NCBI GenBank assembly: GCA_002269645.1
Contig: NIVC01000506.1
Location: forward strand, 186,001 to 250,000
Direction: 5' to 3'
Length of the DNA: 64,000 nt
DNA from: Macrostomum lignano
Taxonomy: Eukaryota
Under the pieces are notes generated by a model. That model searched no databases. It saw only the letters and a list, made by a program, of their open reading frames with translations, and had not been told where the DNA came from. Positions 396 through 20,143 of this stretch are shown here, piece by piece. Each line of letters starts with the position of its first letter. Positions within the stretch are counted from its first letter, which is position 1. The translations under genes were made by a program, and so were the position numbers.

Positions 396-1616
396 ATGCT
401 TTCTCACGTGCGCTCCATGTCTCCCAGGAGGCTGATACCGCCCCTGGTGCTGCTCGTGATCGCCAGCCTGCTGCTCGGGCTGTATAATTTCGGCTCAAAC
501 GGCTGGCTGCAAGGAATCAAATACCACGATATCGTCCAGTTCGACCAGAGGCCTGCTCCGGATAGCTTTGTACCGCGGGCCGCTATGCCAGCAGTTACTC
601 CTAAGGCTAAGGGATCTGCACCTTTGCAAGGCCTCGACACGGAGGCTCTGCGGCGAAACTTCCCAAAGCTTAAAGAAGCCACAAAACGGCACAGCGGGCC
701 GCACAAGGCCCGCTTGGACCAGATGATGATCAGCTACCTGCCGTTCATCAGCACCAGTGCGTGGATGCTACACAGTCCAAACGGAAAAAAGTTTACTGTA
801 TCGGAAGTTCAAGCTGTATCCAATTCCACAATTCAGCCTGGATTCCAGGTGCCAAACATTGCCCACTTTGTCATGCCGTTCGGCGAAACCAACCTGCAGT
901 TCCACCACATGGTCAGCCTCCTCAGCTGTCTGCACATAATGAAGCCTCACCGTCTGCTGCTGTGGTACGCTCCTGGCAAGCTGCCAAGCGGACAGTGGTG
1001 GGACAGAGTCAGGAAGAATCTGACCGAGTCGGAGTGGGAAGAGAAGATCATATTCGTTCAGAGACCGATTCCCACATCCGTGTACTCGGTTCCAGTTCAC
1101 GGAAAAGAGCACCAAGCAGATATGATGAGAATGGAGGCTGCGCTCGTATTCGGAGGACTGTACATAGACATTGATGTCCTGGTTCTGAAACCGCTGGAGC
1201 CTCTTCGGAAATTCCTTTTCACTATCGGCAGGGAGTTTCCACAGGGTCTATGCAACGGCGTCTTCTTGTCCGCTCCTAGCGGGACGTTTCTGGCGATGTG
1301 GCACACGGCGTACCAGGTGTTTTTCGACGGTTCCTGGAATGACCATTCGGTGTGGCTGCCAAACACCATGCAACCCATTTTCCCGGACCTGTGTCACGTG
1401 GAAGAGGAGAGCATGGACCGGCCGAACTGGACTCCAGAGGAGGTGAGCTGGATCTATGTAAAAGGAAAGCAGAGCAGGTGGGATTGGCGCTCGAAGAACT
1501 ATGTCATGCACCTGTGGTTCCGGAAGTACGGCAAGCAGCACAACATGGACAGCATCAAGACTTTGGACAGCATGTTTGGAGAAATGTGTCGCTTTATTCT
1601 TTTTGGAGCTGTTTAA
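396..1616 (+). CDS. GT32-family glycosyltransferase (alpha-1,4-GlcNAc/Gal transferase-like), copy 1, intact, single exon, type II membrane protein
   Basis: 406-aa ORF. N-terminal hydrophobic anchor (LIPPLVLLVIASLLLGLY). HQADMMRMEAALVFGGLYIDIDV contains the GGxYxDxD motif of GT32. Also GLCNGV and HLW motifs. Confidence 0.85.
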   Translation: MLSHVRSMSPRRLIPPLVLLVIASLLLGLYNFGSNGWLQGIKYHDIVQFDQRPAPDSFVPRAAMPAVTPKAKGSAPLQGLDTEALRRNFPKLKEATKRHSGPHKARLDQMMISYLPFISTSAWMLHSPNGKKFTVSEVQAVSNSTIQPGFQVPNIAHFVMPFGETNLQFHHMVSLLSCLHIMKPHRLLLWYAPGKLPSGQWWDRVRKNLTESEWEEKIIFVQRPIPTSVYSVPVHGKEHQADMMRMEAALVFGGLYIDIDVLVLKPLEPLRKFLFTIGREFPQGLCNGVFLSAPSGTFLAMWHTAYQVFFDGSWNDHSVWLPNTMQPIFPDLCHVEEESMDRPNWTPEEVSWIYVKGKQSRWDWRSKNYVMHLWFRKYGKQHNMDSIKTLDSMFGEMCRFILFGAV

Positions 1617-2904
1617 GTGCACGTTGGATGCTCGATCGTATATCCTTTTACAATTACATGTAGTTCGTAAGCGTAATGCCGCTGGTTCCTTTGCTTTCTA
1701 CGGAATAATTTCCAGTAGTAGCTGACCAATCTTCACAGCTTCGCCGCGACTCTGTCTTGGTAAGGCAAAATCAACTCAGTGGCTTTCCATTATCACACTG
1801 TGCTTGTTTCTGCGTTTTTTACTTTTCCTTTGCTTTTTAGTGCCACGTGCTTTTTCCAACAGAAATATACTCCTGCATGTACATGTGGATATTTTTTTGC
1901 TTTTCGGCCAAAAGTCCAGCGGAGCTGCATGGCATGTGTGAGCTCAAGATAACTTCGATCAAAAGTGTTTTGGTCACTGCTGGTTAAAGATGCAAAGATT
2001 AAAGACCGACAGAGAAACGGAGTTGTCTCAATGTTATCGATAGATAAGCTCATTTACTGTGTCCTGCTACTCACAACACAATTTGCTTAATACGATTAAA
2101 CAAAGTTTCAACAGTAAACATGTAAGCAAGCTCTCGTACCGATACCGATCCACACCTACCCCGAGAACTGCATGCATGCACTGGATACTTAATCGCCTGC
2201 CCATGGGTCTCTTGGACCGGCCCTATACGTTCTTCAGTTTACAAGCGTATGCAGCGCGATTGACGAATGCTACTTGTCGGGTCGGGCGTTAACTCCGGCG
2301 AACTCGATATTTCTGGCCCCCTTCATTTCACCTGTAAATAGAGCTATTCACTTCAGACTCATTGGGACCTGAGGCTTGGGGTTTGGAGAAGGGGCCAACA
2401 AATGTCTTGATCTTATATCCTCTCTGATTGGCCTCTTTGATGTGCAGTTGCATGAAATGGCAACGACTCACAGCACAAATGCCTTGGAAAATTTTGGCTG
2501 CCACATACACATAATGTGGCTCAAACTTATGAAGCTTCAGTTGTCAACAAATATTTTGAGTGCGGGTTGGCCTATGACAAAATCCGGACTCTCATCCATG
2601 GTACTACTAAACTAACGTGCATGTGCATTTAACATGCATGTTCATGTTTGCTGCCGAGTACAAAATAGCGATACCAATTCAATTCGTCCGTGCAAAACTC
2701 GAGGCCATTCTATATACTCGGTGTACCACATCTGGTAGCTCGCCATTGACATGTGAGCTTGGTTAGGGTTTTGCCACCTAGATGAAGATCTAAGCACATT
2801 GCTCTCCAGGATCAGTTGCCTTTGCTGGCCCCCATTGCCTTCCACAGGCGAGTTAAAGCTTACTATGCTCCTACCCTTCCATTTGATGCTCACAATAGAA
2901 CGTT

Positions 2905-3163
2905 CCTCATTCTGCTTTGGCGCCCCTCATTCTGCTTTGGCGCCCCTCATTCTGCTTTGGCGCCCTTCATTCCATTTTGGCGCCCTTATTCTGCTTTGGC
3001 GCCCCTCATTCTGCTTTGGGACCCCTCATTCTGCTTTAGTGCCCCTCATTCTGTTTTTTTGCCCCTCATTCTGCTTTGGCGCCCCTCATTCTGCTTTGGG
3101 ATTGGGACCCCTTATTCTGCTTTGAGACCCCTCATTCTGATTTAGGACTCCTCATTCTGCTTT
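2905..3163. repeat. 20-bp minisatellite (CCTCATTCTGCTTTGGCGCC)n, about 13 units, degenerating to the right
   Basis: 20-bp periodicity visible directly. Confidence 0.95.
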
Positions 3164-4042
3164 CAAATTTGAAACATCTTTTTTAGCGCCCTCATCCGGT
3201 CTTGGCATCTCATTTCTCGTTCTTTTTTTGACCTCTTTCCTACAATTTTGAAGTTAGAATGAAATCCATTACAAGTTGCGAGCTACGGTGTTTATAGTAT
3301 TAGTAATTTAGCTTTGTAGGTAGCATTCATTCAATTTTATATTCAAGCCCACATCAATGCGTTCCTTCATCTGAGGAGGGTTTGGAGTATGAGAGAAAGT
3401 TAATGTACATTGGGCCGCTGGGCGGTTATCAAAAGAAAGGCAGTGTACAGTGGAAGGGCAACACTGTCGGCTGCGATCGTTCACGGGGGAGTGGGGTGGG
3501 TTGCCGACCCCCATGGATCAAAATCCTGGCGCAGTCACATTCACCCCACACTCTGTCCCCCGTGCAACCCCCCCCCCCAGCCCGATGGCCATCTATTTCC
3601 AGTTCGTCTCGTCTCGCTTCCCTCGCGTCAACTGAAAGCGCTTCTCTCTCTTTGGTTTGTGTCTTGTGAATCATTTCTAGTTTTTTGGCTGTCTTCTGCT
3701 GCCTTTAGTAATTCGAGATTCAACTTAAATAGAATAAATAGCTAACAACTCAGCTTTCTCTAGCCGTTACTGTAAAACACTGAATAATAAATAAATGTAT
3801 GAAAGTTCATGGTAATACTTATATTATATTACGATCTTGCCTACATTTGATGCGGAGCAAGTTTTTGTAAACTCAAACCCGGCCTTCGAAATTCGAATAG
3901 AGACCATACTGCAGACAGTTACGGTAAGTCCCACGATCCCACTCAAATTTTGTGTGCTGCTGATATTGCAGGTTTGTTGAATTTTGACAAGTCTAAATTT
4001 GCACATTAAGAGCTCACTGATTTTCTCCGGATGCCTATACGC

Positions 4043-4131
4043 TTCCCAGCCAGACATTTGCCAGTCGAAGTTTCCCAGCCAGACATTTGCCAGTCGAAGT
4101 TTCCCAGCCAGACATTTGCCAGTCGAAGTTT
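4043..4131. repeat. Three perfect tandem copies of a 29-bp unit TTCCCAGCCAGACATTTGCCAGTCGAAGT
   Basis: Direct reading. No spacers between copies. Confidence 0.95.
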
Positions 4132-4368
4132 GCTAGCCGTCATCAAGTTAGTATACAAAAGTACAAGTATATATAATAAATGCAAGTATACAAAAGTACA
4201 AATATGTACTTGTAAATTATAAAACTAGGGCAGCTTAGTTAATACTGGCTGGCAAACTGAGTGGACCAGGTTTTTGGATGGTGAAAAATTGAAACACTTG
4301 CACATGCCGATACTTTGTTGGCTACAAATTGCGGTCATTGTTTTCTCCGCTGCACTCGCAGGCTCGTC

Positions 4369-5539
4369 ATGACGCAGCAATCGCCAAAGCGGCTGCTGTC
4401 CGCTCTGCTGCTCTGTCTGACGCTGGCGCTGCTGGTCAGCCTGTACTACATCGGGCCGCTAATCAGCATTGACAGTGCGTCTGTGCTGCACCGTCAACTG
4501 GCGCTGCCTATTGCCCTTTCTCTATCAGCCGAGCGCAATAGCAGCCCGTTGTACAGTTCTATGGACGTGGAGGCACTGCGCTTGAACTTCGTGCGCCTGC
4601 GTGAAGCAGTGCGACTCCACAGCGGCAGGTACCACAGCCGACTGGACCAGATGATGGCCACCTACCTGCCAGCTGTCGACACCAGCGCATGGTCTCCGCA
4701 CAGTCCCAGCGGCAAGAAGCTCACAATTGAGGAGGTCCATTCCGTGGCGAAGTCGACCATTCAGCCTGGATTTCAGGTGCCAAACATTGCTCACTTTGTC
4801 ATGCCGTTCGGCGAAACCAACCTGCAGTTCCACCAGATGGTCAGCCTTCTCAGCTGTCTGCACATAATGAAGCCTCACCGTCTGCTGCTGTGGTACGCTC
4901 CTGGCAAACTGCCAAGCGGACATTGGTGGGACAGAGTCAGGAAGAATCTGACCGAGTCGGAGTGGGAAGAGAAGATCATATTCGTGCAGAGACCGATTCC
5001 CACATCCGTGTTCTCGGTACCAGTCCACGGAAAAGAGCACCAGTCAGATGTGATGAGGCTTGAAGCTGTGCTCGTATTCGGAGGACTGTACATGGACATC
5101 GATGTCCTGGTTCTAAAACCGCTGGAGCCTCTTCGGAAATTCGTTTGCACCATTGGCAGGGAGGTTCCATACGGCCTGTGCAACGGCGTCTTCATGTCCG
5201 CTCCTAGCGGGACGTTTTTGGCGATGTGGCACACGGCGTACCAGGTGTTCAACGATGAGGCTTGAGCACTCAGTGAAGCTTCCGCACTCGATGCAAGCCG
5301 CCTTCCCGGACCTGTGTCACGTGGAAGAGGAGAGCATGGACCGGCCGAACTGGACTCCAGAGGAGGTGAGCTGGATCTATGTAAAAGGACAGCAGAGCAG
5401 GTGGGATTGGCGCTCGAAGAACTACGTCATGCACCTGTGGTTTCGGAAGTATGGACTTCAGCACAATATGGAAAGCATCAAGACTTTGGACTCAAATTTT
5501 GGTGAGATATGTCGCTACATCTTGTTCGGAATGTACTAG
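4369..5539 (+). pseudogene. GT32 glycosyltransferase copy 2, frameshifted (5-nt deletion near 5263 creating TGA); pseudogene or consensus error
   Basis: ATG at 4369, TM segment, GGLYMDIDV. Copy 4 reads GAGGCT TGG GGC GAA CAC, this copy reads GAGGCT TGA GCA C. The C-terminus continues in another frame to TAG at 5539. 1171+5 nt restores a multiple of 3. Confidence 0.8.
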
Positions 5540-6578
5540 TGCTTTTATATTTTATAAATTTTTGGGACCTGGAGGCTGTAGCTTTTAGTAGACCGCATTT
5601 TTGCTCTGTTTCCTGCATGCTTTGTCCAAACTCGAAACTGATATATAGTTTCTTTTTCCGAGTATGTCATCGGGATGCTATATTTTGTGCTTTGAACCTC
5701 ACCTTGCCCGTTTTTTGTGTCTATAATGAACTCCTATTGGCAGGTGATTGATTGTGTCTTACCCCGCGTTTTACAATTTCATTTTTCCGCATAAGTTCGA
5801 CTTCTGACTGTTGTATGAGCTCACCAACAATTGCTATGCACGGGTTTTTCATCAGCGCAAAGTCTCGTGTTCTGATTTCATTCATTTTTTGCTTAACGTT
5901 TGATTGCCCTAACTGTAAATTTGCAGCATAAGTAAACTCATCGATGATCTCATCTCGCGCGGAAGATTTGAACATGTGCCCGCATTTTGACGTTTATGTG
6001 CGAATACAGCATGTACGAGCGCTTTCAAGTGCTGCTTGTGAACAAATTTACAGGTGAAGTTTCAAAACGGGTTCCAGAAGTTTTACTGTGAGTGCTTGAC
6101 AAGCCAGTAAGTCCCACGCTGCACTCTTGTCATTCGATGGTCGAAATCATTGCGTACGCCTACTAAAAATCAATATATGAGACAATGTGCATGTGGGTTT
6201 TGTCATAGACAATGATAAATTTTTGCTCACTCGTGGCGAAGTTGTCTACCTCCAAAACCATGAATACAATCTACCATATATTTTACTAAAAAACGACGTT
6301 CCGAAAAATCCACGAAGAATGCAAAAACAATTGAAAAATTACCAGAACTTCCATTTGCATTTTTAAACCTTGGCTTGAGTAAAAGAAACTTATAAATTAG
6401 CCTCGCACATGTTTGTCCGAGTTCGAGCCGCGAGCTAAACGAATGCTCGTACGTTTCAACCACGTTCGGAAGTCCAAAAGGTGAGAATTTGTTGGTGTTA
6501 TAAGCTATAAAAACTTTCTGTCTCTCTAATGAATTTCGCAGAGAAAGCGGCCTCCAGAGAAACGATTTGTACGATTTT

Positions 6579-6960
6579 AGGGCGTAGCAACCGGGGCCGT
6601 AGGTTGGTGGTGCCAACGGCTCAGGCTCGATTCCAACAGTCATCAATTATAATATTAATTATTAATCATTAATTATTAGCCAATTAAATTGAAATCTGCA
6701 CTATTGCAGAAATATTGCACTCTGCTCGTGCAATTAGCGCCACTGAGGACCAATCCCTAAGGCACAGTGCAGACTTAATTGTACATGCCTAACGATAAAT
6801 AAAGTCCGGGCCACATGTACACTCCTGTGTCAGTGTGTGCCTGTGCGTATGACTGCGTACGCATCTGCGCGGCTGTGTGCCTGCTCAGGGGAGTCAGCAG
6901 AATAGACAGTGATGCCTCTCACCGGTTGTGTGACAATGTCGCTGAAAGTGCGCCAGGGTG
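6579..6960 (+). mobile_element. tRNA-derived SINE, older diverged copy lacking the 3' tail
   Basis: CAGGCTCGATTCC B-box-like motif. The 6724-6960 body aligns with the reverse complement of 8300-8530 (e.g. CCTGCTCAGGGGAGTC, AAAGTGCGCCAGGGTG). Confidence 0.75.
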
Positions 6961-7519
6961 ATTTTCAAGACTTGAGATACTTTTGAGATAATCGAGAAAT
7001 TGGATCCAGATTCGAGATTCAGCCTAATTTTCATCTAGTAGGCCGGCATATTTACACTTTTCTCTGTATCAATGTTAATATTGGAACTTGTTAAACGTAT
7101 GCATTGATGATAATAGAAAGAAAAACAAAGATTATTTAATTTTGAGCTTGTTAATAACTTGATTTATATCAAATGTAGTAATGTAAGTAAATGATATTGA
7201 ATAACATCGGCAAGCTTCCAGATTGTTTCGCGATATTATTACTATTTTCAAGTTTGAATCGGTGCCAAAACATAGTGCCTCTGAGCACTACTAGATAGAG
7301 CAGTTTATAGTATTAGGTAAATGGAGCAGTAGCAAATTGGTAGATGGAGCAATAGATAGGGCAGTAAAAGTAGCAATAGATGGAACGGTAGATAAGAGCA
7401 GTAGATAGAGTAATTTATAGAGCATTTTCTGATGCCATTTTCTATCTATCCCTTTTGGCATCAGATATCATTTTCTATCATGGCACTGTTGCAGCACCAA
7501 TTCAAAATAGAAAATAATA

Positions 7520-7650
7520 TTGCTTTTGCAGCCCATTTGGGCTTACGCGCTTTGAATTTAATCCAAGATACGTTTGCCAATGTAATGGAGCTTTTGTCTA
7601 TGGTAGAAAGGCTGGCACAGTGGCATTTCATTTGGTCCAACAAGCATCAA
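7520..7650 (-). repeat. Inverted duplicate of part of the transposase relic (matches about 8120-8250)
   Basis: About 125 bp at roughly 85-90% identity by eye to the reverse complement of 8120-8250 (AATTTAATCCAAGATACGTTT, CATTTCATTTGGTCCAACAAGCATCAAT). Confidence 0.85.
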
Positions 7651-7669
7651 TTTGGTCCATAATTTCATT

Positions 7670-8262
7670 TGCAACTGCTGCGGAGGAGCAAGATCAGCCC
7701 CAGAATTGTGGACCATATGCTAGGCTGTCAAACCAATGCCATTGGCTTGCAATTGCAGCACTCGAAAGAGTTGAGAACACCCAAAGAAAATTGCAAGGTT
7801 GCTGAATGTAAGAAATGATGGTTTACAGCATCCAGCAGCGCGTTAAAACTCTGACGGCAGAGATTGCAAGTCACTCGAGAGCCTCAAGTCCAACTGCTAC
7901 TCGATGCAGTTGAGACGAATCCTTTTTTGACGTTTCAGAAAATGCAGCATAAGTTGAGGGAACAGTTCCAGTTGGTTATCAGATTTCGACTATGAGCAGA
8001 AGCGCTGGAAAAGCAACTTAAAATTGTTGGTAGAGACGCTGACATTCCAGCGGTGCGCAACAACCTGCAGACGGTTGAGGAGAGAAGGCAAGAGTTTGTC
8101 CAATGGCTCACGAGTTTAGTATTGATGCTTGTTGGACCAAATGAAATGCCGCTGGGCCAAGCTTGCCATAGACAAAAGCTCCATTGCATTGGAAAACGTA
8201 TCTTGGATTAAATTTAATGCGCGTAGGCCCAAATAGGCTGCAAAAAGCTATATTCGGAAGCA
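7670..8262 (+). pseudogene. Decayed IS630/Tc1/mariner-type transposase
   Basis: Broken frames give GPYARLSNQ..AIAALER..KIARLLNV..MVYSIQQR (first HTH), LLDAVETNPFLTFQKMQHKLREQF (second HTH), RNNLQTVEERRQEFVQWL and GKRI..VGPN. This order matches Tc1-like transposases. Multiple stops and frameshifts. Confidence 0.6.
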
Positions 8263-8278
8263 AACTGATGATCACCAT

Positions 8279-8993: not shown

Positions 8994-9609
8994 TGACATT
9001 CGACTGACATTGGCACCGATTGACATTGGCACCGACTGACATTGGCACCGACTGACATTGGCACCGACTGACATTGGCACCGATTGACATTGGCACCGAT
9101 TGACATTGGCACCGACTGACATTGGCACCGACTGACATTGGCACCGATTGGCATTGGCAACTGACTGACATTGGCACCGATTAACCTTGGCACCGACTGA
9201 CATTGGCACCGATTGACATTGGCACCGGTAGACATTGGCACCGATTAACATTGGCACCGACTAACATTGGCACCGATTAACCTTGGCACCGACTGACATT
9301 GGCACCGGTTGACATTGGCACCGATTAACCTTGGCACCGACTGACATTGGCACCGATTGACATTGGCACCGGTAGACATTGGCACCGATTAACATTGGCA
9401 CCGACTGACATTGGCACCGATTGACATTGGCACCGACTGACATTGGCACCGGTTGACATTGGCACCGATTAACCTTGGCACCGACTGACATTGGCACCGA
9501 TTGACATTGGCACCGGTAGACATTGGCACCGATTAACATTGGCACCGACTGACATTGGCACCGATTAACCTTGGCACCGACTGACATTGGCACCGATTGA
9601 CATTGGCAC
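8994..9609. repeat. 16-bp minisatellite (TTGGCACCGA[C/T]TGACA)n, about 38 units
   Basis: Direct periodicity. Ends about 47 nt upstream of the copy 3 ATG. Confidence 0.95.
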
Positions 9610-9656
9610 GAGAGACGAGCAGGCGCGGTGTCTTCTACTAATGACTTAAATTCTTC

Positions 9657-10873
9657 ATGCTTTCTCACGTGCGCTCCCTGCCTCCCAGGAGGCTGATACC
9701 GCCCCTGCTGCTGCTCGTGATCGCCAGCCTGCTGCTCGGGCTGTATAATTTCGGCTCAAACAGTTGGCTGCAAGGCATCAAATACCACGATATCATCCAG
9801 TTCGACCAGAGGCCTGCTCCGGATAGCTTTGTACCGCGGGCCACTATGCCAGCTAAGGCTAAGGGATCTGCACCTTTGCAAGGCCTCGACACGGAGGCTC
9901 TGAGGCGAAACTTCCCGAAGCTTAAAGAAGCCACAAAACGGCACAGCGGGCCGCACAAGGCCCGCTTGGACCAGATGATGATCAGCTACCTGCCGTTCAT
10001 CAGCACCAGTGCGTGGATGCTGCACAGCCCAAACGGGAAGAAGTTTACTGTATCGGAAGTTCAAGCTGTATCCAATTCCACAATTCAGCCTGGATTCCAG
10101 GTGCCAAACATTGCTCACTTTGTCATGCCGTTCGGCGAAACCAACCTGCAGTTCCACCACATGGTCAGCCTTCTCAGCTGTCTGCACATAATGAAGCCTC
10201 ACCGTCTGCTGCTGTGGTACGCTCCTGGCAAGCTGCCAAGCGGACATTGGTGGGACAGAGTCAGGAAGAATCTGACCGAGTCGGAGTGGGAAGAGAGGAT
10301 CATATTCGTGCAGAGACCGATTCCCACATCCGTGTACACGGTTCCAGTTCACGGAAAAGAGCACCAGTCAGATGTGATGAGGCTTGAAGCTGTGCTCATA
10401 TTCGGAGGACTGTACATGGACATCGATGTCCTGGTTCTGAAACCGCTGGAGCCTCTTCGGAAATTCGTTTGCACCATTGGCAGGGAGGTTCCATACGGTC
10501 TGTGCAACGGCGTCTTCTTGTCCGCTCCTAGCGGGACGTTTTGGCGATGTGGCACACGGCGTACCAGGTGTTTTTCGACGGTTCCTGGGTTGACCACTCG
10601 GTGTGGCTGCCAAACACCATGCAACCCATTTTCCCGGACCTGTGTCACATGGAAGAGGAAAGCATGGACCGGCCGAACTGGACTCCGGAGGAGGTGAGCT
10701 GGATCTATGTAAAAGGACAGCAGAGCAGGTGGGATTGGCGCTCGAAGAACTACGTCATGCACCTGTGGTTCCGGAAGTACGGCAAGCAGCACAACATGGA
10801 CAGCATCAAGACTTTGGACAGCATGTTCGGAGAAATGTGTCGTTTTATTCTTTTTGGGGTTGTTTCAATTTAG
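9657..10873 (+). pseudogene. GT32 glycosyltransferase copy 3, 1-nt deletion at 10539-10542; pseudogene or consensus error
   Basis: Near-identical to copy 1. GGGACG-TTTT-GGCG here versus TTTCT or TTTTT in the other copies. Downstream frame ends TAG at 10873. 1217+1 nt = 406 codons. Confidence 0.8.
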
Positions 10874-11878
10874 ATTGAAGTGCGTTACATCTTTATAGAG
10901 TAAATTTCTTTAATCGATTACACACATACCTACCGACAGACCATTTTTAGTATATGGAATGAAGCAAAGCTAGAAACAAACTAAAACGTTCTCAGTTAAC
11001 GATAAAATGCTAATCTTAAATAGCCTTTAGGCTTTAGGCTTACTTTTACGATGCCAGTATGTCCTGTATGCATGCAGTTTCTAGAGCATCTCTACTTACC
11101 TCATTGAGTTTGTAACGACTATCGATACTCGGTCCTTTATCCAAATGAGATTTCCAGGTGTTGCCAGATCCTGTCTGACATTCCAGAAACAACAAATGTC
11201 AGTAACGAGCTGGGGTTCGGTGGTGAGACTAACCACTACCGATGATTGCAAGCGAGTTACTGTTTTTGAATCCTTCAAAGTTTCCGTTTTCAGTTTTTCG
11301 TTTTCGAGTTTCTTTGAGGCACGTGCGTTCTGGAAGATGTATCATAACGGTTTGTGGTCACTCTCAACAGTCACTTTGTGCCCTCGGCTCCAACAGCTAC
11401 AGAGGAGGCACCAACTACAGAGGTCCCCACGACTGCTGTGAGAAGCGGGTTCCAACGAGCGCTTACCAGTGACTAGATGACTAAGCTTTTCGGCAATCTT
11501 CTTTTGGACGTTTTCAGACGGGAAAACTGACCGCGTTAAAAATTCGTTATCCTAATTTCCTCGCATCCTAACAAATTGATTGATGCCAGTTACATTTATC
11601 TACATGTGCAAAATGTAAACGTACATGTCTATGTAATGGAGGGTATCAAATCTACTGTACTGATGAATGATAACTGGAATGATGCCTACATCAATGGCGG
11701 CGGAAACGCGTGTCAGTTCGGGTGCGCACGTAACTTCTGATTATTCTCAAGTAGAAGGCAGCTGTCGCAGACAGACCGAATTAAGTTGTCTATGACCTTA
11801 GCTTTATGTCTTTATAAGCTAAATATACGAGAGCTGCAGATACGAACTAAGCGCAGCACAGACGGCTATGCCGTAATA

Positions 11879-13453
11879 CACCATTTTACCCTCGATTTTG
11901 AACAAGGAGAACTTCGAAACTGACAAACTCCTCTTCAATATTGACACTCTATGGTCGGGCACTCAAAATCTACAATCAATATTGACAGATCAAGCTTCAA
12001 TTTTGACAAACTCTGGTTCAATTTTGACAATGCACGTTTAGTCAACTTCTCCTGGGAGAATTCGGTAACAAAGTAATCAAATGAAAGCCTGAACGGGGCG
12101 AAAGTTATCTGTGCAAAATCAGCTGATTCTGACTTTTGGGATCTACAAGTATTGATAAAAAAATTTTCTCCATCCTTTTACACACAGACTAAAATATCCT
12201 GACTGGTTGGGCCGCAAAGTCCGATTCTATTTTGACAGAGTTGCTTCAAAACTGACACTCCATGGTTTGTGTACCCCAAAACTCCGCTTCATTTTTGACA
12301 ACTCCTAATCAATATTGAACAGTTTACAATCAGTTTTGACTGCTACCTTATTACTTCTGTTCTTGGTTGTGTATGTTTCAGAAAAAAAGCCGTAAACACG
12401 TAGCATTGTTAAAGATTCAAAAGAAGTATTGTACTCGTATTTTTAATAACACGCATTTGTTAGATTTCTAGGTTAGGTTAAGTATCTGGACATGGGCGGC
12501 GGGAGCTTGCGGCATCCCCTGCACGATTTCATGTGCCATGGTCCTCCTTCTCTTTATCCCCAACTGATTCGCCAGGTGCACAAAGTCGTTTCGGTTCTCA
12601 TGAGCAGAAATCAGGCGCTTTCGGTCCTGGAAGGACACAGACCGATTTTTGCGGCGGCCAGGCTGTTTCTGCTCCTCTTCAAAAAACCTTAAGTGGCGTC
12701 GCTATCAATCCTCCTGACTAAATTAGTGCTTCAGATTAGCGATTAAAAGTGACAAAACACGAGCAGAGCGAGAACTGCTTTCCTGCTCTTATGAATTCCT
12801 CCGTGACAAGATGTGCATTCGTTGGTCTGACCAACCATCTATGATAAAAACTGAAGCGTAGCCAATTAGATTCGAGGTACAGGCTGCCTCTAGACATGAA
12901 CAAAAACAAACTGCCATAGACAAAAGACTGCCTCGAAATTTCCAAGCTTAAGGGTTCTTAGTTAGAATTGTCAAAATCTTAAGCAAAAAGTCAAAACTGA
13001 TTGTAAACTGTTCAATATTGATTAGGAGTTGTCAAAAATGAAGCGGAGTTTTGGGGTACACAAACCATGGAGTGTCAGTTTTGAAGCAACTCTGTCAAAA
13101 TAGAATCGGACTTTGCGGCCCAACCAGTCAGGATATTTTAGTCTCTGTGTGTAAAAGGATGGAGAAAATTTTTTTATCAATACTTGTAGATCCCAAAAGT
13201 CAGAATCAGCTGATTTTGCACAGATAACTTTCGCCCCGTTCAGGCTTTCATTTGATTACTTTGTTACCGAATTCTCCCAGGAGAAGTTGACTAAACGTGC
13301 ATTGTCAAAATTGAACCAGAGTTTGTCAAAATTGAAGCTTGATCTGTCAATATTGATTGTAGATTTTGAGTGCCCGACCATAGAGTGTCAATATTGAAGA
13401 GGAGTTTGTCAGTTTCGAAGTTCTCCTTGTTCAAAATCAAGGGTAAAATGGTG
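11879..13453. mobile_element. Non-autonomous DNA transposon (1575 bp) with about 462/464-bp TIRs and TA TSD, inserted in the 5' LTR; Tc1/IS630-derived
   Basis: Ends CACCATTTTACCC ... GGGTAAAATGGTG. TIRs at 11879-12340 and 12990-13453. TA duplicated (11877-78, 13454-55) relative to the intact 3' LTR. Internal minus-strand HTH remnant. Confidence 0.92.
12522..12683 (-). pseudogene. Transposase N-terminal HTH remnant inside the long-TIR element
   Basis: Translates FEEEQKQPGRRKNRSVSFQDRKRLISAHENRNDFVHLANQLGIKRRRTMAHEIV, resembling Tc1-family N-termini (S.EDR.R+I.A.E.G.D+..+A..LGI.R.TA..IV). Confidence 0.55.
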
Positions 13454-13480
13454 TATAACATTCATATCCAAAACATAACA

Positions 13481-13490
13481 TGGTGTCAGA
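13481..13490 (+). other. Primer-binding site TGGTGTCAGA
   Basis: Directly follows the 5' LTR CA. Complementary to the 3' end of tRNA-Leu(CAA)-type tRNAs (..TCTGACACCA). Confidence 0.75.
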
Positions 13491-13539
13491 GGAAACCGTA
13501 AAAGTGCAACTTCAATTCGAGTTCCACTAAAGCATACAT

Positions 13540-16500
13540 ATGGCTGATTCTGGAAGCCTAAAGCCGCCTGCACCATTTTCCTTTGATGAAAACAAAACCG
13601 AGAAATGGCAAAAGTGGATCAACGGTTTCAAACTATTCCTCACGGCGACTAAGAGAGAAAAAGAGGCCGACGAGGTCAAGACAGTAATTCTCCTCACGGC
13701 ATTGGGTGAACATGGTAGAGATATTTACGATACGCTAGATTTGACTGAAGGTAATTCATTTGACCAAATTGTTGCCGCATTTGAGAAATTCTGCAAGCCG
13801 CTGGACTGTGAAACATTCGAAAGATACAAGTTCAGAATGCGCACACAGCAGCAATTCGAAGAATTCGATCACTATCTTGGCGAGCTGCGAACACTCATAA
13901 AACAATGCAATTTTGCAAAGCCAATGGCATCCGAAACAATCGAAAATGCAATTCTAAGAGACCAAATCGTGTATGGAGTGCACAATCCTTCGGTCAGGGA
14001 GAGGCTATTGGAACAGGACAAGCTGACGCTCGAGAAGGCAATCGCATTGTGTCGAGCATGTGAAGCATCCAAAGTGCAAGCACAGAAAATGATCGGTAAG
14101 GCGTGTGAAAACCCAAGACCAAGTGTGGATACAGTTAAAAAATGGCACCCACGGCAAAGCACCAGAGAAACCGAGTGAGAAACTCCTCCCAAGGCTCCCG
14201 CAAGGACTCGCATCAGGGCAGAACCAGCTGCAGATACTGCGGAAAACAGCACACCTTTGGTAGTAAGCACTGTCCTGCATTTGGAAAGCTGTGTAGTAAT
14301 TGTGGAAGAAAGAACCATTTTATAGCCATGAGTCAGCAAAAGTTTCGAAATAACCCTACAAGACATGTCAGACTGGTAGATGAACATGATGACGAAAATG
14401 ACGAAGACACAGGAGGCAGCTTAACAAAATCATGGGTTGTATCTTCAGTTGCTAGCTGTGACCAGATGGCTGGAAATAATGAAAATAAGACCGCTCGCAC
14501 GAACAGCAAGACAATCGCGAGTGTACTGGTTGAGGATCGTCAGTTGATTTCGTTTAAAATCGACACAGGAGCCGATGTTAACATTATGTCTGCAAAAAGA
14601 CTTAGGCAGATTACCAAGAAGGAATACCGAGAGGATAGAAGCACACAGTTAGTTGTGTACAACAAACAGAGGCTGACAGTTTTGGGACAAATTCAACTGC
14701 TTCTAAGACACCAAAATGAAGAAATTCAAGCAAAATTCTTTGTCATTGCTGAAGATATTATGCCATTGCTTGAGACAAATACAGCAGAGAGTCTCGGACT
14801 GATACGGATACTGCATGCTGTTCAACAGGATGTACCGGTATCGGAAGAACCACTTACAAAGGAAGTGATTTTGAAAGAATACGCCGATGTCTTTGAAGGG
14901 CTAGGTTGTCTGCCAGGAACACACCATATAGTTTTACAGACGAACGCTGTTCCCAGAGTTCAGGGTCCAAGAAAAGTTCCGTTTGCAGCATTGAAAGCAT
15001 TAAGAGATGAGCTGCATCGCCTCAGTGAGCAAGGAATGATTTCCCAGTGTTCGCACCCCACGGAGTGGGTATCCAACGTTGTGGTTGTGTGGAAGCCTGA
15101 CAGTTCTGTGCGTCTCTGTCTCGATCCGCAAAGTCTAAACGAGTTCATCATTCGAGACCGGTACCCAATTCCATCATATAATGAAATGATTAGCAAGATG
15201 ACTGGCGCAAAGTTTTATTCAACTTTTGATGCTACAGCAGGATTTCATCAAGTAGCTTTAGATCATGAAAGCTCTCTTCTAACCGCATTTCATACACCTT
15301 TCGGAGTCTACAGGTGGAACAGACTGCCATTCGGATTCAAGGATGCTCCAGAGGCGTATCAGAGAAAAATCAGATCACGAGTCATGTTGCAAACTCCGCA
15401 AACTATATTGACGATATAATCGTGTGGGGCAGAACAAGAAAAGAGCATGATGACTCGGTGAGGCAACTGCTACAGCAGTGCAAGGATAAGAATTTAAAGC
15501 TAAACAAGACCAAAGCTAAAATCGGACAGCGAGAGTTGAAATTCCTAGGACATATTCTAACCAGCGAAGGAGTCAAGATCGATCCGGAAAAGATACGAAG
15601 CATCAAAGACATGCCGCATCCGAAAAGTTACTCCCAGATATCTGAAAAAGCCGCGCAACTACAAAGATTCATCGGCAGCGCAAACTTCTTGTCGAAGTTC
15701 ATACCAAATTTCTCAGCGCTTGCTTCACCTTTGCGACAGTTACTGAAAAAAGATGTAGCGTGGAACTGGGGAAAACGGCAGGAAGAAGCATATGAAACAA
15801 TTAAGGAATCACTGTGCAAAGCTCCACTATTGGGACAATTTAACCCAGATCAGAGTGTCATTCTAAGTGTAGATGCCAGTAAAGATGGACTCGGAGCCGC
15901 ATTGATGCAAGATGGACACGTCATTGAATACGCATCGTCATCGATGACTCCTGCTCAAAAGAAATATGCTCAAATCGAAAAAGAATTCTTGGCAATAGTC
16001 TTTGGATGTCGCAGATTTCGACAATACTTATGGGGTCGGCACGTACAGGTTGAATCAGATCACAAGCCCCTGCAATTCATTATGAAAAAGCCACTGAGTG
16101 AACTATCAGCTCGACTGCAGCGACTAGCTTTGAAAATTCAAGAATTCGATCTCAATGTGACGTATGTACCCGGAAAAGAACTATACCTTGCGGATACACT
16201 AAGCCGCGCTTATCTGAAATCCGTACATTCATCCAATGATATTGATGATGACATTCAGTGCCAAATACTTGGAGTAGCTTGTGTATGCCTACCAGACAAC
16301 TTGCTAAAGGACATCCAGCATCACACAAATGCTGATGATTTATGTCATAAGCTAAAGGACCAGATTCGAGAGGGTTGGCCAGATGCTAATCCCAAATAGC
16401 TGAAGAACTGAAGCCATTCTGGAATATTCGGCATGAACTGATGGAGAATGACAGACTCATATACAAGAGCAGCAAAATATTCATTCCTGATGCAATGCAA

Positions 16501-17628
16501 AGACAAATGCTTCAAATCCTCCATGAAAGTCATCAAGGCGTGGAAAAGACGTTGATGAAGGCTACTGAATCTGTATTTTGGCCTCGAATGCGCCATGACA
16601 TTGAGCAATACATTTCTTCATGCGAAAAATGCCAAAGTTACCAAGCTCTTCATCAAAAAGAATCCATGAAAATGGTTGAAATACCTGAGTATCCATTTCA
16701 AGAGTGTGGAACTGACATTTTCTATTGGAAAGGGGAAACACACATTGTCCTGGTTGACAGGTTAAGTCGATGGATCTGCACTGATAAGATCACGACAACA
16801 TCAGCAGAGTGCGTCATAAAACAGCTGTCACAATATTTTGCTACCTATGGTACTCCAGAAGTGATAAGATGTGACAACGGACCTCCATTTGGATCCAACA
16901 GGTTTAAAGAGTTTGCTGAACAGAAAGGTATACAAATTAGGACATCGTCGCCAAAATATCCACAATCAAATGGCCTAACAGAAAGAGCTGTTCAGACAGT
17001 TAAAGGATTTCTAAACAAAGCAGAAGATATAAATTGTGCATTACTACACTATCGGAATACGCCAATTGAAAGAGGGCTACCGACACCGGCTGAGCTAGTG
17101 ATGGGACGAAAGCTCAGATATCAACTGCCACTGCCCATTGAACAGCTGAAACCAAGACAAGTCTGGACAAAACGTGAACTAGAGATTTTGGCAGAGAAGA
17201 ACAGTAAACAGGCATTCTACTACAATCGCACTGCACGAGACCTACGACCGTTTAAAGAAGGAGATCAGGTGTGGATGCAAGAAGATCGAAGACAATGGAT
17301 TCCTGCAGAAATCGTGAAACCTGATGTCACTGACCCAGACAGGTCATACAAAGTTCGAACTGCTACAGGTCGTGAATTCAGAAGAAATCGCAGATTTCTG
17401 GCAAAGCGCAATACAGACCGCAGAATGCAGACCATACCAGAGTATTCAAGGATTCAACTACCTAATCAGGATTCTAACAATGGAACGATTCAGACTTCCA
17501 GCTCAGACGCTCATGCATCCAATACAGTACACAGTTCTCAGCTGGATTCTGGAAAATCTGGTGGAACAAAATACATTACACGATATGGACGTGAAGTAAA
17601 GCCAACTCAATTTTACAAGGCTACATAA
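13540..17628 (+). pseudogene. gag-pol polyprotein with three frameshifts (about 14140, 15367, 16395)
   Basis: Gag LKPPAPFSF..KWQKW; zinc knuckles CRYCGKQH..C and CSNCGRKNH; protease FKIDTGAD; RT YIDD (15404-15415); RNase H VDASKDGLGA/EKEFLAI/SDHKPL; integrase H-H-C-C plus D,D35E (GTDIF, CDNGPPF, SNGLTER). Confidence 0.93.
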
Positions 17629-17706
17629 TTATATGCACTCAAACTGAACTAACTGACAATGCCATTTTCATTCATTCATCCATTAATGCGTATGACACTT
17701 CTTTTT

Positions 17707-17719
17707 GGAAAAAAAGGGA
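17707..17719 (+). other. Polypurine tract GGAAAAAAAGGGA
   Basis: Immediately precedes the 3' LTR TG at 17720. Confidence 0.9.
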
Positions 17720-18763
17720 TGTCGCAGACAGACCGAATTAAGTTGTCTATGACCTTAGCTTTATGTCTTTATAAGCTAAATATACGAGAGCTGCAGATAC
17801 GAACTAAGCGCAGCACAGACGGCTATGCCGTAATATAACATTCATATCCAAAACATAACAGCAGCCAATGAAAAGAGCGCACTCAATGATGCGTGTACAT
17901 CTGCTTGTGTACTTTTGTACGCTTGGCGACCTTCGCTGGCTGAACTGGCTGAAGATTTACCTATAATAATAGGTAAAATAATAATATAATAGTAATACGT
18001 ATAATAATATTTTTTATGATACTTGAAATCTTGAAACCGAGAACGAATAAAAGCGTACGAGGACTTAAGCCTTACTGCCAATTTTAATGGGGGCAAGGTG
18101 TTCTTGTTCTACAGTAAGTAGCATTCACTCCAATTTATATTTCACGTAGTTGTTGTCATCTATAGATAGATTTTAATTACCATCGCTGTGGCTCTCCCTC
18201 TACTTGGAGACCGTGCTCACTGCCCATCACAGTCTCCGGCAGAAAAGCACCCTTCTTCCTCGGCTTTCTCTCTCTCTCTCTGTCTCTCTCTTCCTCACGC
18301 ACTCAGGGAAGAGAGGAAATTTTGGGCGCTGAGCAGGGATGAGAGACGAGAATTGGATTCGGCCCCTGTTGGCGGTGCGCGCTGTCCCCTGTAAAATGAG
18401 CCAGAGACACAGACAGGTTTCTTGCGCACACCCACCTCTACCCAACATACACTGACTATAGCGTACGCGAAGATAAGAACAAAAAAGAACTGGCTAGCTT
18501 TACATTCACTAAGAATGTCAGGAAACAAACACGCGCGCGCACTAGCACAGCCCTATTTCTAGCTATATGTTATATCAAAGCCTGCTATTACCAGTTTAAC
18601 ACGGTGATAGCAGCACACACTTCGCACGCTCTGCAAGAAGCACAACTTCGTCAAGACAAACAGGCGTTCATCTCAAACTTTTATACAAACCAGAAACCGT
18701 ATCGAACTCAGTTGGAGTTACGCAAGCAATATTGTTTGAAAGCGCAATTGATGCTGCGCCCGA

Positions 18764-20143
18764 ATGCAGCACCTCCTGTGCAACTGGATTTTTCAGACAT
18801 CTAACCGCAGATGCGTGGCCGCGCTCGCTGTGCTGCTCAGTCTAAGCCTCTTTTACATCGGAATCAAACCCTGGATACGAACTCAAACTGTATTATTTGA
18901 TACAGAGGTAGTCGATGCGCCAAGCAGAAACACTGAGGTCTCAGACGAGCCGGCTCGCATGACTTCACAGAGCGCGCAGACTCCGAAGACAGGCCACAAG
19001 ACGGAATCACAGACTCCGAAGACAGTCCACAAGACGGACTCACAGACTCCGAAGACAGTCCACAAGACGGACTCACAGACTCCGAAGCCGTTGCAGAAGT
19101 CCAGCGCAATGAAGGAATCGGAAGAAAAACAAAAAGGCTTCAGCTCCTTGCCTGTTGACTCTAGAGCTCTAAAGAAAAACTTCCCGATGCTGAAGGAGGC
19201 TGCTAAGAAGCACAGCGGCAGGTACCACAGTCGACTGGACCAGATGATGGCCACCTACCTGCCAGCTGTCGACACCAGCGCATGGTCTCCGCACAGTCCC
19301 AGCGGCAAGAAGCTCACCATTGAGGAGGTCCATTCCGTGGCGAAGTCGACCATTCAGCCTGGATTCCAGGTGCCAAACATTGCTCACTTTGTCATGCCGT
19401 TCGGCGAAACCAACCTGCAGTTCCACCACATGGTCAGCCTCCTCAGCTGTCTGCACATAATGAAGCCTCACCGTCTGCTGCTGTGGTACGCTCCTGGCAA
19501 GCTGCCAAGCGGACATTGGTGGGACAGAGTCAGGAAGAATCTGACCGAGTCGGAGTGGGAAGAGAGGATCATATTCGTGCAGAGACCGATTCCCACATCC
19601 GTGTACACGGTTCCAGTTCACGGAAAAGAGCACCAGTCAGATGTGATGAGGCTTGAAGCTGTGCTCGTATTCGGAGGACTGTACATGGACATCGATGTCC
19701 TGGTTCTGAAACCGCTGGAGCCTCTTCGGAAATTCGTTTGCACCATTGGCAGGGAGGTTCCATACGGTCTGTGCAACGGCGTCTTCTTGTCCGCTCCTAG
19801 CGGGACGTTTCTGGCGATGTGGCACACGGCGTACCAGGTGTTCAACGATGAGGCTTGGGGCGAACACTCAGTGAAGCTTCCGCACTCGATGCAAGCCGCC
19901 TTCCCGGACCTGTGTCACGTGGAAGAGGAGAGCATGGACCGGCCGAACTGGACTCCGGAGGAGAGGACCTGGATCTACAATATAGGACAGCAGAGCAGGT
20001 GGGATTGGAGGACGAAGAACTACGTCATGCACCTGTGGTTTCGCCTGTACAATAAGCAGCACAGCATGGACAGCATACGAACGCTGAATTCAATGTACGG
20101 TGAGATGTGCCGTCGCATCTTGTATGGGAGCGGTCAGCCCTAA
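18764..20143 (+). CDS. GT32 glycosyltransferase copy 4, intact, with an extended stem carrying 11-aa repeats
   Basis: 459-aa ORF. TM segment VAALAVLLSLSLFYIGI. SQTPKTVHKTD repeats. GGLYMDIDV. Confidence 0.87.
   Translation: MQHLLCNWIFQTSNRRCVAALAVLLSLSLFYIGIKPWIRTQTVLFDTEVVDAPSRNTEVSDEPARMTSQSAQTPKTGHKTESQTPKTVHKTDSQTPKTVHKTDSQTPKPLQKSSAMKESEEKQKGFSSLPVDSRALKKNFPMLKEAAKKHSGRYHSRLDQMMATYLPAVDTSAWSPHSPSGKKLTIEEVHSVAKSTIQPGFQVPNIAHFVMPFGETNLQFHHMVSLLSCLHIMKPHRLLLWYAPGKLPSGHWWDRVRKNLTESEWEERIIFVQRPIPTSVYTVPVHGKEHQSDVMRLEAVLVFGGLYMDIDVLVLKPLEPLRKFVCTIGREVPYGLCNGVFLSAPSGTFLAMWHTAYQVFNDEAWGEHSVKLPHSMQAAFPDLCHVEEESMDRPNWTPEERTWIYNIGQQSRWDWRTKNYVMHLWFRLYNKQHSMDSIRTLNSMYGEMCRRILYGSGQP

What the first reader, a model, noticed from the sequence alone, without database searches (positions are those of the whole stretch)
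396..20143. Four GT32 glycosyltransferase paralogs are segmental mosaics of one another
Seen in sequence: copies 1 and 3 share their N- and C-termini, but copy 3's middle block (about 10362-10498, HQSDVMRLEAV..FVCTIGREVPYG) matches copies 2 and 4 instead. Copy 2 is nearly identical to copy 4 from 4618 to 5365 (vs 19211-19963). It then switches to 77 nt identical to copy 3 (5366-5442 = 10694-10770) and ends uniquely. The QPGF..WEE core is essentially the same in all four. Inference: recurrent gene conversion is shuffling blocks around the DXD motif and the C-terminal (likely acceptor-side) region. This would act as a combinatorial glycan-diversifying cassette, for example for mucus or surface glycans.
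Basis: partly seen in the sequence, partly recalled or inferred. Interest (0 to 1): 0.72.

Follow-up and report, generated by a model that had tools for sequence, protein, structure and literature searches.

The report
Gene conversion among tandem flatworm glycosyltransferase genes
Five neighbouring copies of an uncharacterised sugar-transferring enzyme gene in the flatworm Macrostomum lignano keep overwriting parts of one another, which is a real but ordinary case of concerted evolution rather than a device for generating glycan diversity.

Summary
The window is Macrostomum lignano contig NIVC01000506.1. Its four GT32-like (PF04488) genes are block mosaics, and a fifth copy (c0) lies 7.7 kb upstream of the window.

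- **Two lineages.** Type I is c0, c1 and c3. Type II is c2 and c4. They differ by 36-43% in three blocks.
- **Shared core.** They share a 284-nt catalytic core with no synonymous differences. The nearest outside paralogs differ there at 40-45% of synonymous sites. This indicates homogenisation, not purifying selection.
- **Shorter tracts.** c2 carries 77 nt of type I sequence. c1 has a private patch around the DXD motif.
- **Reproducibility.** Both features recur in a second, 96-97% identical version of the array on contig NIVC01000952.1, so they are not assembly chimeras and mostly predate that split.
- **Recent event.** One tract is specific to this contig: c3 differs from c4 at 1 of 400 nt but from its own counterpart at 13 of 400.
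- **Broken copies.** c2 (5-bp deletion) and c3 (1-bp deletion) are frameshifted here.

The divergent blocks show dN/dS of about 0.2 and only two or three variants each. The "combinatorial diversifying cassette" reading is therefore not supported. The net effect is homogenisation.

The parts
396..1616 (+). c1: intact single-exon GT32-like gene, 406 aa, type I. N-terminal TM helix at aa 14-34, DXD at D258-I-D260.
   Evidence: ORF. PF04488 at 27.8 bits against a cut-off of 23. AF2 model with pLDDT 90.
4369..5539 (+). c2: type II copy, broken in this contig. A 5-bp deletion after 5262 creates an in-frame TGA at 5263-5265. It also carries extra private substitutions in the core.
   Evidence: Its counterpart B2 on NIVC01000952.1 is intact at 391 aa.
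9657..10873 (+). c3: type I copy with a 1-bp deletion in a T-run near 10541, causing a frameshift. This could be a recent lesion or an assembly indel.
   Evidence: Its counterpart B3 is intact at 405 aa.
18764..20143 (+). c4: intact type II gene, 459 aa, with a Thr/Pro/Lys-rich 11-aa repeat in the stem.
831..1114 (+). Homogenised catalytic core, in c1 coordinates. It corresponds to c2 4759-5042, c3 10083-10366 and c4 19352-19635. Divergence is 0-4% among all copies, with 0 of 61 synonymous sites differing between c0 and c4.
1115..1250 (+). c1-private patch spanning the DXD motif (aa 240-285). It differs by 12-15% from every other copy and is shared by the c1 counterpart on the second contig.
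   Evidence: Bootstrap for 'c1 alone' is 100%.
5366..5442 (+). Type I tract inside type II copy c2. It is 77/77 identical to c3 and 66/77 to c4, and is also present in B2.
10173..10572 (+). Maximal extent of a contig-specific tract in which c3 equals c4 (1 difference in 400). The minimal extent is 10297-10478. It includes the type II 'FVCTIG' patch and the shared K-to-R variant.
   Evidence: Fisher p=0.0017 against B3-B4.
698..830 (+). Block A, just upstream of the family-wide catalytic domain (aa 102-145). Type I and type II differ by 36-38%, with pS 0.68. It has not been homogenised.
1322..1379 (+). Block E (aa 309-328, a predicted helix). Type I and type II differ by 40-43%. Here type II resembles the outside paralogs.
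11763..18004 (+). Ty3/gypsy-type LTR retrotransposon between c3 and c4. Its LTRs start at 11763 and 17720, and pol is split into several ORFs. It is absent from the second contig and present in the third.

Best explanation
This is a head-to-tail array of five intronless genes (c0, c1, c2, c3, c4). c0 lies just outside the window. Each encodes a type II membrane, GT-A fold, DXD-containing glycosyltransferase of the PF04488/GT32 kind, in Macrostomum lignano.

The copies belong to two old lineages: type I (c0, c1, c3) and type II (c2, c4). Repeated non-reciprocal ectopic recombination (interlocus gene conversion) between neighbours has overwritten the catalytic core, so that all copies now carry essentially one sequence there. 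It has also left shorter tracts: type I sequence in c2, and c4 sequence in c3. Segments that have diverged too far to pair keep their lineage identity. These are the stem, block A, block E and the C-terminal tail.

**Shown:** the mosaic itself, the synonymous-site homogenisation, its reproduction in a second version of the array, and one event specific to one version.

**Inferred:**
- the direction of each transfer;
- that divergence limits conversion;
- that the unconverted C-terminal blocks carry any specificity difference.

In a neopolyploid carrying up to 15 copies, several copies are decaying. c2 and perhaps c3 are broken here, and c1 is broken on the other contig.
For: - **Site patterns and block divergences**. 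Type I vs type II differ by 36-38% in block A, 0-4% in the core, 40-43% in block E and 25-34% in the tail.
- **Synonymous sites**. Core pS is 0.00 between the types, against 0.40-0.45 to the outside paralogs P0002 and P0003. Block A has pS 0.68 and dN/dS of about 0.2.
- **Run and permutation tests** give p<0.0005.
- **PHI test** gives p=0.036 for four copies and 0.005 for five.
- **Block-wise bootstraps** conflict.
- **The same blocks recur** on contig NIVC01000952.1, which is 96-97% identical in the flanks, and on NIVC01001447.1 for c4.
- **Homology between copies is confined to the coding region** or a few hundred bases around it.
- **Sharing within one version.** 1045G occurs only in A3, A4 and C4. 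Positions 1215-1226 are type II only in A3. 890A occurs only in B0 and B3. 995G among the array copies occurs only in A0 and A1.
- **A3-A4 differ at 1 of 400**, while A3-B3 and B3-B4 each differ at 13 of 400.
- **Family assignment.** PF04488 is above its cut-off. All 92 sampled relatives match it. The AF2 model has pLDDT 90, and its best Foldseek matches are retaining GT-A enzymes.
Against: - All three contigs come from one PacBio read set and one Canu plus Pilon pipeline (PMC5730564). Small patches and the indels could therefore be polishing or assembly artefacts. I could not inspect reads.
- PHI on ten sequences was not significant (p=0.11).
- No GC3 rise was seen in the converted core, so there is no sign of GC-biased conversion.
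- Terminal block exchanges could also come from unequal crossing-over rather than conversion.
Confidence: 0.85

Rival explanations
1. The mosaics are assembly or polishing chimeras. Reads from one paralog were used to build or 'correct' another.
For: REAPR scored Mlig_3_7 as only 63.95% error-free bases. It was polished with Pilon using Illumina and RNA-seq reads (PMC5730564). 36% of the assembly length lies in scaffolds that are chimeric between subgenomes (PMC10733133). The c3 frameshift sits in a T-run. The c3=c4 tract is seen in one contig only.
Against: The main block boundaries are reproduced on an independently assembled contig that differs by 3-4% in its flanks and carries its own private substitutions. 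These boundaries are type I vs type II in blocks A and E, the c1 patch, and the c2 type I tract. c4 is reproduced on a third contig. Copies lie 3-9 kb apart, which is within PacBio read length.
Confidence: 0.06
2. One reading: the array is a selected combinatorial cassette system, and conversion creates new enzyme specificities.
For: The unconverted blocks E, G and H lie in the C-terminal part of the catalytic domain. In other retaining GT-A enzymes that part contributes to acceptor binding (my own knowledge, not tested here). Several different mosaic combinations exist among 11 sequences. Broken copies could still act as donors.
Against: Each block has only two or three variants. dN/dS is about 0.2 in the variable blocks. 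Most mosaics are fixed and shared between subgenome versions. The largest tract makes the copies identical rather than different. There is no expression-site and silent-cassette architecture: each copy has its own start codon, TM segment and stem.
Confidence: 0.05
3. Purifying selection or a local mutational cold spot, without recombination, keeps the core identical.
For: The core is the most conserved part of the protein family-wide. Most of the near-invariant residues of the 92-sequence alignment lie in it or in the adjoining DXD-motif block.
Against: Synonymous sites are also identical: 0 of 61 differ. The same codons differ at 40-45% of synonymous sites in the single-copy paralogs O2 and O3, and at 33% between those two. 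Selection on the protein cannot explain the c2 or c3 tracts.
Confidence: 0.02
4. Reciprocal unequal crossing-over between tandem copies produced hybrid genes, and gene conversion in the strict sense is not needed.
For: The copies are in tandem and in the same orientation. The lineage order is interleaved (I, I, II, I, II), which suggests rearrangement of the array.
Against: Internal tracts are flanked on both sides by the recipient's own sequence. Examples are the c2 77-nt tract, the c3 tract and the core between blocks A and E. These would need paired crossovers, which is conversion in effect. Copy number is the same, five, in both versions. Intergenic DNA shows no hybrid structure.
Confidence: 0.1

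Closest known systems
Concerted evolution by interlocus gene conversion in tandem duplicates, e.g. human RHD/RHCE, CYP21A2/CYP21A1P, gamma-globin HBG1/HBG2 and the red/green opsin genes (my own knowledge, not tested here)
   Same: The paralogs are close together and in the same orientation. Short non-reciprocal tracts make parts of paralogs more alike than their flanks or their orthologs. Pseudogene copies take part. Homology is confined to the genes.
   Different: This case has five copies of two old lineages in a neopolyploid flatworm. The homogenised part is sharply bounded, with adjoining blocks saturated at synonymous sites.
Hybrid ABO (GT6) alleles formed by recombination or conversion (my own knowledge)
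   Same: It is a retaining GT-A glycosyltransferase in which exchange of short coding blocks creates mosaic alleles. GT6 structures are among the Foldseek matches.
   Different: ABO hybrids arise between alleles or with distant paralogs, and a change of specificity is proven. Here the exchange is between tandem paralogs and no activity is known.
GT32 / PF04488 enzymes: Och1-type alpha-1,6-mannosyltransferases, and A4GALT and A4GNT
   Same: They share the PF04488 signature with the YxDxD motif, a GT-A fold, and a type II membrane layout.
   Different: There is no PF04572 (Gb3_synth) C-terminal region in the window proteins. No solved structure is detectable by sequence beyond the DXD stretch. 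The closest relatives are uncharacterised proteins of amphioxus, nemerteans, annelids and molluscs.
Variable-first-exon clusters (UGT1A, clustered protocadherins) (my own knowledge)
   Same: The GenBank models join the variable N-terminal part of one copy to the shared catalytic part of the next copy.
   Different: Here every unit is a complete ORF. The 'splice' sites are weak, and the junction lies inside identical sequence, where mapping artefacts are expected.

Membership tests
GT32-type glycosyltransferase (Pfam PF04488 Gly_transf_sug) | Match to PF04488 above the gathering score | tested here: met
   c1 scores 27.8 bits and c4 31.5 bits against a cut-off of 23. All 92 of 92 relatives match.
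GT32-type glycosyltransferase (Pfam PF04488 Gly_transf_sug) | DXD metal and nucleotide-sugar motif after a beta-strand | tested here: met
   D258-I-D260 follows strand 254-257. D258 and D260 are at least 90% conserved in the 92-sequence alignment.
GT32-type glycosyltransferase (Pfam PF04488 Gly_transf_sug) | GT-A fold | tested here: met
   The AF2 model has pLDDT 90.2. The best Foldseek hits are glycogenin, the UGGT catalytic domain, GT6 and XXYLT1, with probability 1.0 and TM 0.45-0.54 relative to the target.
GT32-type glycosyltransferase (Pfam PF04488 Gly_transf_sug) | Glycosyl transfer with retention of configuration | not testable with these tools
   Needs an enzyme assay.
A4GNT / A4GALT (the name UniProt gives the M. 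lignano proteins) | C-terminal Gb3_synth region (PF04572) | tested here: not met
   c1 and c4 give no hit at E<=0.1. Only 2 of 92 relatives match.
Interlocus gene conversion / concerted evolution | Paralog tracts far more alike than adjoining sequence, synonymous sites included | tested here: met
   Core pS is 0.00, against 0.68-0.72 in blocks A and E and 0.40-0.45 to the outside paralogs.
Interlocus gene conversion / concerted evolution | Conflicting phylogenies in adjacent blocks | tested here: met
   Bootstraps of 98-100% support incompatible groupings in blocks A, C, E and G. Run tests give p<0.0005.
Interlocus gene conversion / concerted evolution | Paralogs on one chromosome version share variants that their counterparts on another version lack | tested here: met
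   Sites 890, 995, 1045 and 1215-1226. A3-A4 differ at 1 of 400, A3-B3 at 13 of 400. Caveat: this rests on one assembly.
Interlocus gene conversion / concerted evolution | Non-reciprocal transfer (donor unchanged) | not testable with these tools
   Needs pedigrees, or populations with ancestral haplotypes.
Programmed diversity-generating cassette system (Ig pseudo-V, VSG or pilin type) | One expressed site plus many silent, diverse donors | tested here: not met
   There are five full-length units, each with its own start codon, TM segment and stem. Each block has two or three variants.
Programmed diversity-generating cassette system (Ig pseudo-V, VSG or pilin type) | Diversifying selection in the exchanged blocks | tested here: not met
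   dN/dS is about 0.2 in blocks A and E.
Programmed diversity-generating cassette system (Ig pseudo-V, VSG or pilin type) | Somatic or between-individual variation in the mosaics | not testable with these tools
   Needs population or single-animal long reads.

The most novel reading that the evidence does not exclude
The array could work as a variable-N-terminus system at the RNA level. Read-through transcripts would be cis-spliced from a conserved CAG|GTG site in one copy to the same site in the next copy. In the window these sites are c1 848|849, c2 4776|4777, c3 10100|10101 and c4 19369|19370. The result would join one copy's TM, stem and block A to a neighbour's catalytic domain. Conversion would keep the core, and this junction, identical.

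Two GenBank models (PAA74388, PAA74389) have exactly this structure.

The evidence does not exclude this. Mis-mapped reads or chimeric transcript assemblies within identical sequence are the more likely cause.
Probability: 0.04. Interest if true: 0.75.

Novelty: new member of a known kind. Interest (0 to 1): 0.3.

Why it matters
The practical consequences come first.
- This cluster is a trap for annotation and expression work in a model flatworm. The identical core has already produced chimeric GenBank proteins (PAA74387, PAA74388 and PAA74389).
- It will also cause multi-mapping in RNA-seq, and cross-targeting in RNAi or CRISPR experiments.

Biologically, it is a clean example of concerted evolution still acting after a recent genome duplication. 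The boundaries between homogenised and protected segments are sharp. Those protected segments (block E and the C-terminal about 55 residues) point to where any functional difference between the two enzyme types should be sought.

The family itself, found in marine invertebrates and amphioxus, has no characterised member. Assigning any activity to it would be new.

Tried and rejected
- **AF2 with a four-sequence alignment** gave an unusable model (pLDDT 34.5). I replaced it with a 92-sequence alignment.
- **phmmer of c1 against PDB** found nothing. The profile search found only a stretch of about 25-70 residues around the DXD motif. The hits were bacterial glycosylating toxin or effector GT domains and Och1, at E of 1e-4 or weaker. 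I treated this as motif-level similarity only and did not pursue it.
- **Exact-product look-up of c4** found no gene model.
- **A word-indexed protein search with the 92-sequence profile** added only two proteins, a distant M. lignano paralog and a Littorina protein.
- **P0013 and P0162**, from the older ML2-based proteome, turned out to be other, more distant tandem GT32 pairs. They are not an independent copy of this array.
- **A GC3 test for GC-biased conversion** showed no rise in the core.
- **PHI on ten sequences** was not significant (p=0.11).
- **Two-gene unit duplication** (c1-c2 matching c3-c4): the intergenic DNA shows no homology, so I rejected it.
- **Literature searches** found no description of this cluster, and none of gene conversion in Macrostomum.
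- **3D mapping of the blocks** was not possible because model coordinates are not exposed. I placed the blocks on the secondary structure only.


Full report
**Source and setting**

The window is eukaryotic: it is rich in satellites and contains an LTR retrotransposon. The best protein matches are all from Macrostomum lignano. Locus L006, from GenBank assembly GCA_002269645.1 (Mlig_3_7), contig NIVC01000506.1, is 100% identical to window 1-3917. The window therefore starts at about base 186,001 of that contig.

M. lignano is a neopolyploid with three subgenome versions (S, L1, L2) that differ by about 2-2.4% in SNPs (PMC10733133). The assembly is Canu on PacBio reads, polished with Pilon (PMC5730564).

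**The genes**

Four single-exon ORFs lie on the + strand:

| Copy | Window coordinates | State |
|---|---|---|
| c1 | 396-1616 | intact, 406 aa |
| c2 | 4369-5539 | broken: 5-bp deletion after 5262, giving TGA at 5263-5265 |
| c3 | 9657-10873 | broken: 1-bp deletion in a T-run near 10541 |
| c4 | 18764-20143 | intact, 459 aa |

No other copy lies in the window. A fifth copy, c0 (PAA81953, 403 aa, intact), lies 7.7 kb upstream of c1, outside the window.

c1 and c4 match Pfam PF04488 above its gathering score. A profile search of 1.84 billion representatives found 2506 relatives, and their match starts at about c1 residue 149. All 92 sampled relatives match PF04488, and only 2 match the A4GALT/A4GNT C-terminal family PF04572. 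Named relatives are uncharacterised proteins of amphioxus, nemerteans, an annelid and a mollusc.

An AlphaFold model built on 92 sequences has pLDDT 90.2. It shows an N-terminal helix (14-34), a disordered stem, and a folded domain from about residue 80. Its best PDB matches are retaining GT-A enzymes: glycogenin, the UGGT catalytic domain, GT6 and XXYLT1. No solved structure is close by sequence. The GT32-type label is therefore sound. The UniProt name 'alpha-1,4-N-acetylglucosaminyltransferase' is not supported as orthology.

**Checking the observation**

The DNA alignment and the site-by-site patterns show clear blocks, given here in c1 coordinates.

| Block | c1 nt | Pattern among the four window copies |
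|---|---|---|
| A | 698-830 | every informative site groups c1+c3 against c2+c4; 36-38% divergence |
| core | 831-1114 | 0-4% divergence among all four |
| C | 1115-1250 | c1 alone differs, at 19-20 sites |
| D | 1251-1321 | 0-3% divergence, the few differences private to c2 |
| E | 1322-1379 | c1+c3 against c2+c4 again; 40-43% |
| G | 1443-1502 | c4 alone differs; c2 equals c1 and c3 |
| H (tail) | 1503-1616 | c2 and c4 differ from each other and from c1 and c3 |

- c2 vs c4 is 97.7% identical over 4618-5365.
- c2 5366-5442 is 77/77 identical to c3.
- The c3 middle block is 99.3% identical to c4 and 86.9% to c1.

**Is it more than chance or rate variation?**

- Conditioning on polymorphic sites only, the longest shared runs for c2-c3, c3-c4, c1-c2 and c2-c4 were never reached in 2000 permutations.
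- The PHI test gave p=0.036 for four copies and 0.005 for five. It gave 0.11 for ten sequences. PHI is weak here because most informative sites support the same split.
- Block-wise NJ bootstraps with outgroups give strongly supported, mutually incompatible groupings. A single tree does not fit all windows.
- Nei-Gojobori counts are the most telling:

| Comparison | Region | Result |
|---|---|---|
| type I vs type II | 94-codon core | 0 of 61 synonymous sites differ |
| array copies vs single-copy paralogs O2 (P0002) and O3 (P0003) | same codons | pS 0.40-0.45 |
| O2 vs O3 | same codons | pS 0.33 |
| type I vs type II | block A | pS 0.68, dN/dS about 0.2 |
| type I vs type II | block E | pS 0.72, dN/dS about 0.2 |

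The core's identity is therefore homogenisation, not protein-level constraint. The divergent blocks are old rather than fast-evolving.

**Independent versions of the array**

Contig NIVC01000952.1 carries the whole array again (B0-B4). Its flanks are 96-97% identical to the window. It lacks the LTR element between c3 and c4, and has a 7-kb insertion after c2. Contig NIVC01001447.1 carries c4 plus part of the LTR element at 99.4% identity.

The eleven sequences were aligned with the two outgroups. The alignment shows that the A and B versions share:
- the type I/II blocks;
- the c1 patch;
- the type I tract in c2.

These features are therefore not chimeras of one contig, and they predate the A/B split.

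Over 1115-1212, c0 and c3 both look like type II, and only c1 (both A1 and B1) is different. So c1 is the copy that escaped or diverged. Only 1215-1226 is a patch in which window c3 is type II (GTGCT) while B3 and c0 are type I (CCTTC), as are the outgroups at most of these sites.

**Recent events**

Several variants are shared by different paralogs of one version but not by their counterparts:
- 1045G in A3, A4 and C4;
- 890A in B0 and B3;
- 995G in A0 and A1.

Over 921-1321, A3 differs from A4 at 1 of 400 sites. A3-B3 and B3-B4 each differ at 13 of 400 (Fisher p=0.0017). A3-B3 differences are also concentrated in this region: 14 of 490, against 5 of 721 elsewhere (p=0.004). The simplest reading is a c4-to-c3 conversion of 180-400 nt in the window's version after the split. 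This inference rests on one contig, and a polishing artefact could mimic it.

**Broken copies**

Frameshifts are specific to one version:
- A2 and A3 are broken while B2 and B3 are intact.
- B1 is broken by an 11-bp deletion while A1 is intact.

A2 and B1 also carry extra private substitutions in the otherwise invariant core, as expected of real decaying pseudogenes. A3 has only one private substitution besides the single-base deletion in a T-run. That deletion could be very recent or an assembly error.

**Interpretation**

The evidence fits interlocus gene conversion (concerted evolution) in a tandem array. Homology between copies barely extends beyond the coding region. The tracts are internal, flanked on both sides by the recipient's own sequence. 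The effect is mainly homogenising.

- variants per block are few;
- dN/dS is low;
- most boundaries are fixed;
- the DXD region is among the homogenised parts in all copies except c1.

It remains reasonable, but untested, that the protected blocks hold any difference in acceptor specificity between the two types. These are block E (aa 309-328, a predicted helix) and the last 55 or so residues. In block E, type II resembles the outside paralogs. Type I shares a 'PNT' motif with a more distant paralog, which hints at an older or imported segment, but over only 20 residues.

**A side finding**

GenBank proteins PAA74388 and PAA74389 are chimeras. Each joins the N-terminal 155-167 residues of one copy to the C-terminal 263-265 residues of the next copy across a 3-12 kb 'intron'. 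The junction falls in a 27-residue stretch that is identical in both copies. The only GT-AG-compatible position there is TTCCAG|GTGCCA, 18 nt into the homogenised core. PAA74387 joins B0 to the frameshifted B1 near its 3' end.

The likely cause is mis-mapping of reads, or of de novo transcripts, within identical sequence. Real inter-paralog splicing is not excluded, and I give it as the most novel reading.

**Verdict**

The functional gloss is not supported. This is a new example of a well-known process, in an uncharacterised enzyme family of a neopolyploid flatworm.

Noticed in passing
Upstream of the window: L006 10001-11212 (NIVC01000506.1 178706-179917): There is a fifth, intact copy of the gene (c0, PAA81953, 403 aa, type I), 7.7 kb upstream of c1. 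The array therefore has five members, in the order I, I, II, I, II.
   Followed up: yes
L001, L004 and L007 (NIVC01000952.1). Junction sites in the window: 848|849, 4776|4777, 10100|10101, 19369|19370.: GenBank gene models PAA74387, PAA74388 and PAA74389 are chimeras that join one paralog to the next across a false or unusual intron. For two of them the only GT-AG-compatible junction is TTCCAG|GTGCCA, inside the identical core.
   Followed up: partly
window 11763-18004: A Ty3/gypsy-type LTR retrotransposon lies between c3 and c4. It has gag, RT, RNase H and integrase domains, with pol split into several ORFs. The aligned 123 nt at the start of the two LTRs is 98% identical. It is absent from the second version of the locus and present in the third, so it is a recent insertion.
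   Followed up: partly
window 18977-19087 (c4 stem): A 33-bp coding repeat encodes a Thr/Pro/Lys-rich 11-aa unit (QTPKT(V/G)HKTDS). The counterpart B4 has one more unit than the window's c4. This looks like a mucin-like, length-variable stem.
   Followed up: partly
window 5263 (c2) and L004 about 17616-17621 (B1); c1 coordinates 1335-1353: Two independent frameshifting deletions, 5 bp in A2 and 11 bp in B1, fall within 20 nt of each other at the start of divergent block E. A2 and B1 also share three otherwise rare variants (c1 nt 1187, 1247, 1266), although they are different paralogs on different contigs. This is unexplained.
   Followed up: partly
window 9001-9609, 2905-3195, 20287-20643, 21557-21878, 22158-23293, 23699-24000: Dense short-unit satellites (16, 20, 51, 31, 32 and 14 bp) fill much of the intergenic space. 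The 16-bp array ends about 50 bp before the c3 start codon.
   Followed up: no
L007 5781-12897 compared with window about 6105-6116: The second version of the locus has a 7.1-kb insertion between c2 and c3 that the window lacks. I did not examine its content.
   Followed up: no
P0013 and P0162 (M. lignano proteins from the older assembly): Other, more distant GT32-like genes of M. lignano (45-53% identity) also occur as tandem pairs, fused into single gene models. One has a reverse-transcriptase segment between the two domains. The family appears to be expanded in several tandem clusters.
   Followed up: partly
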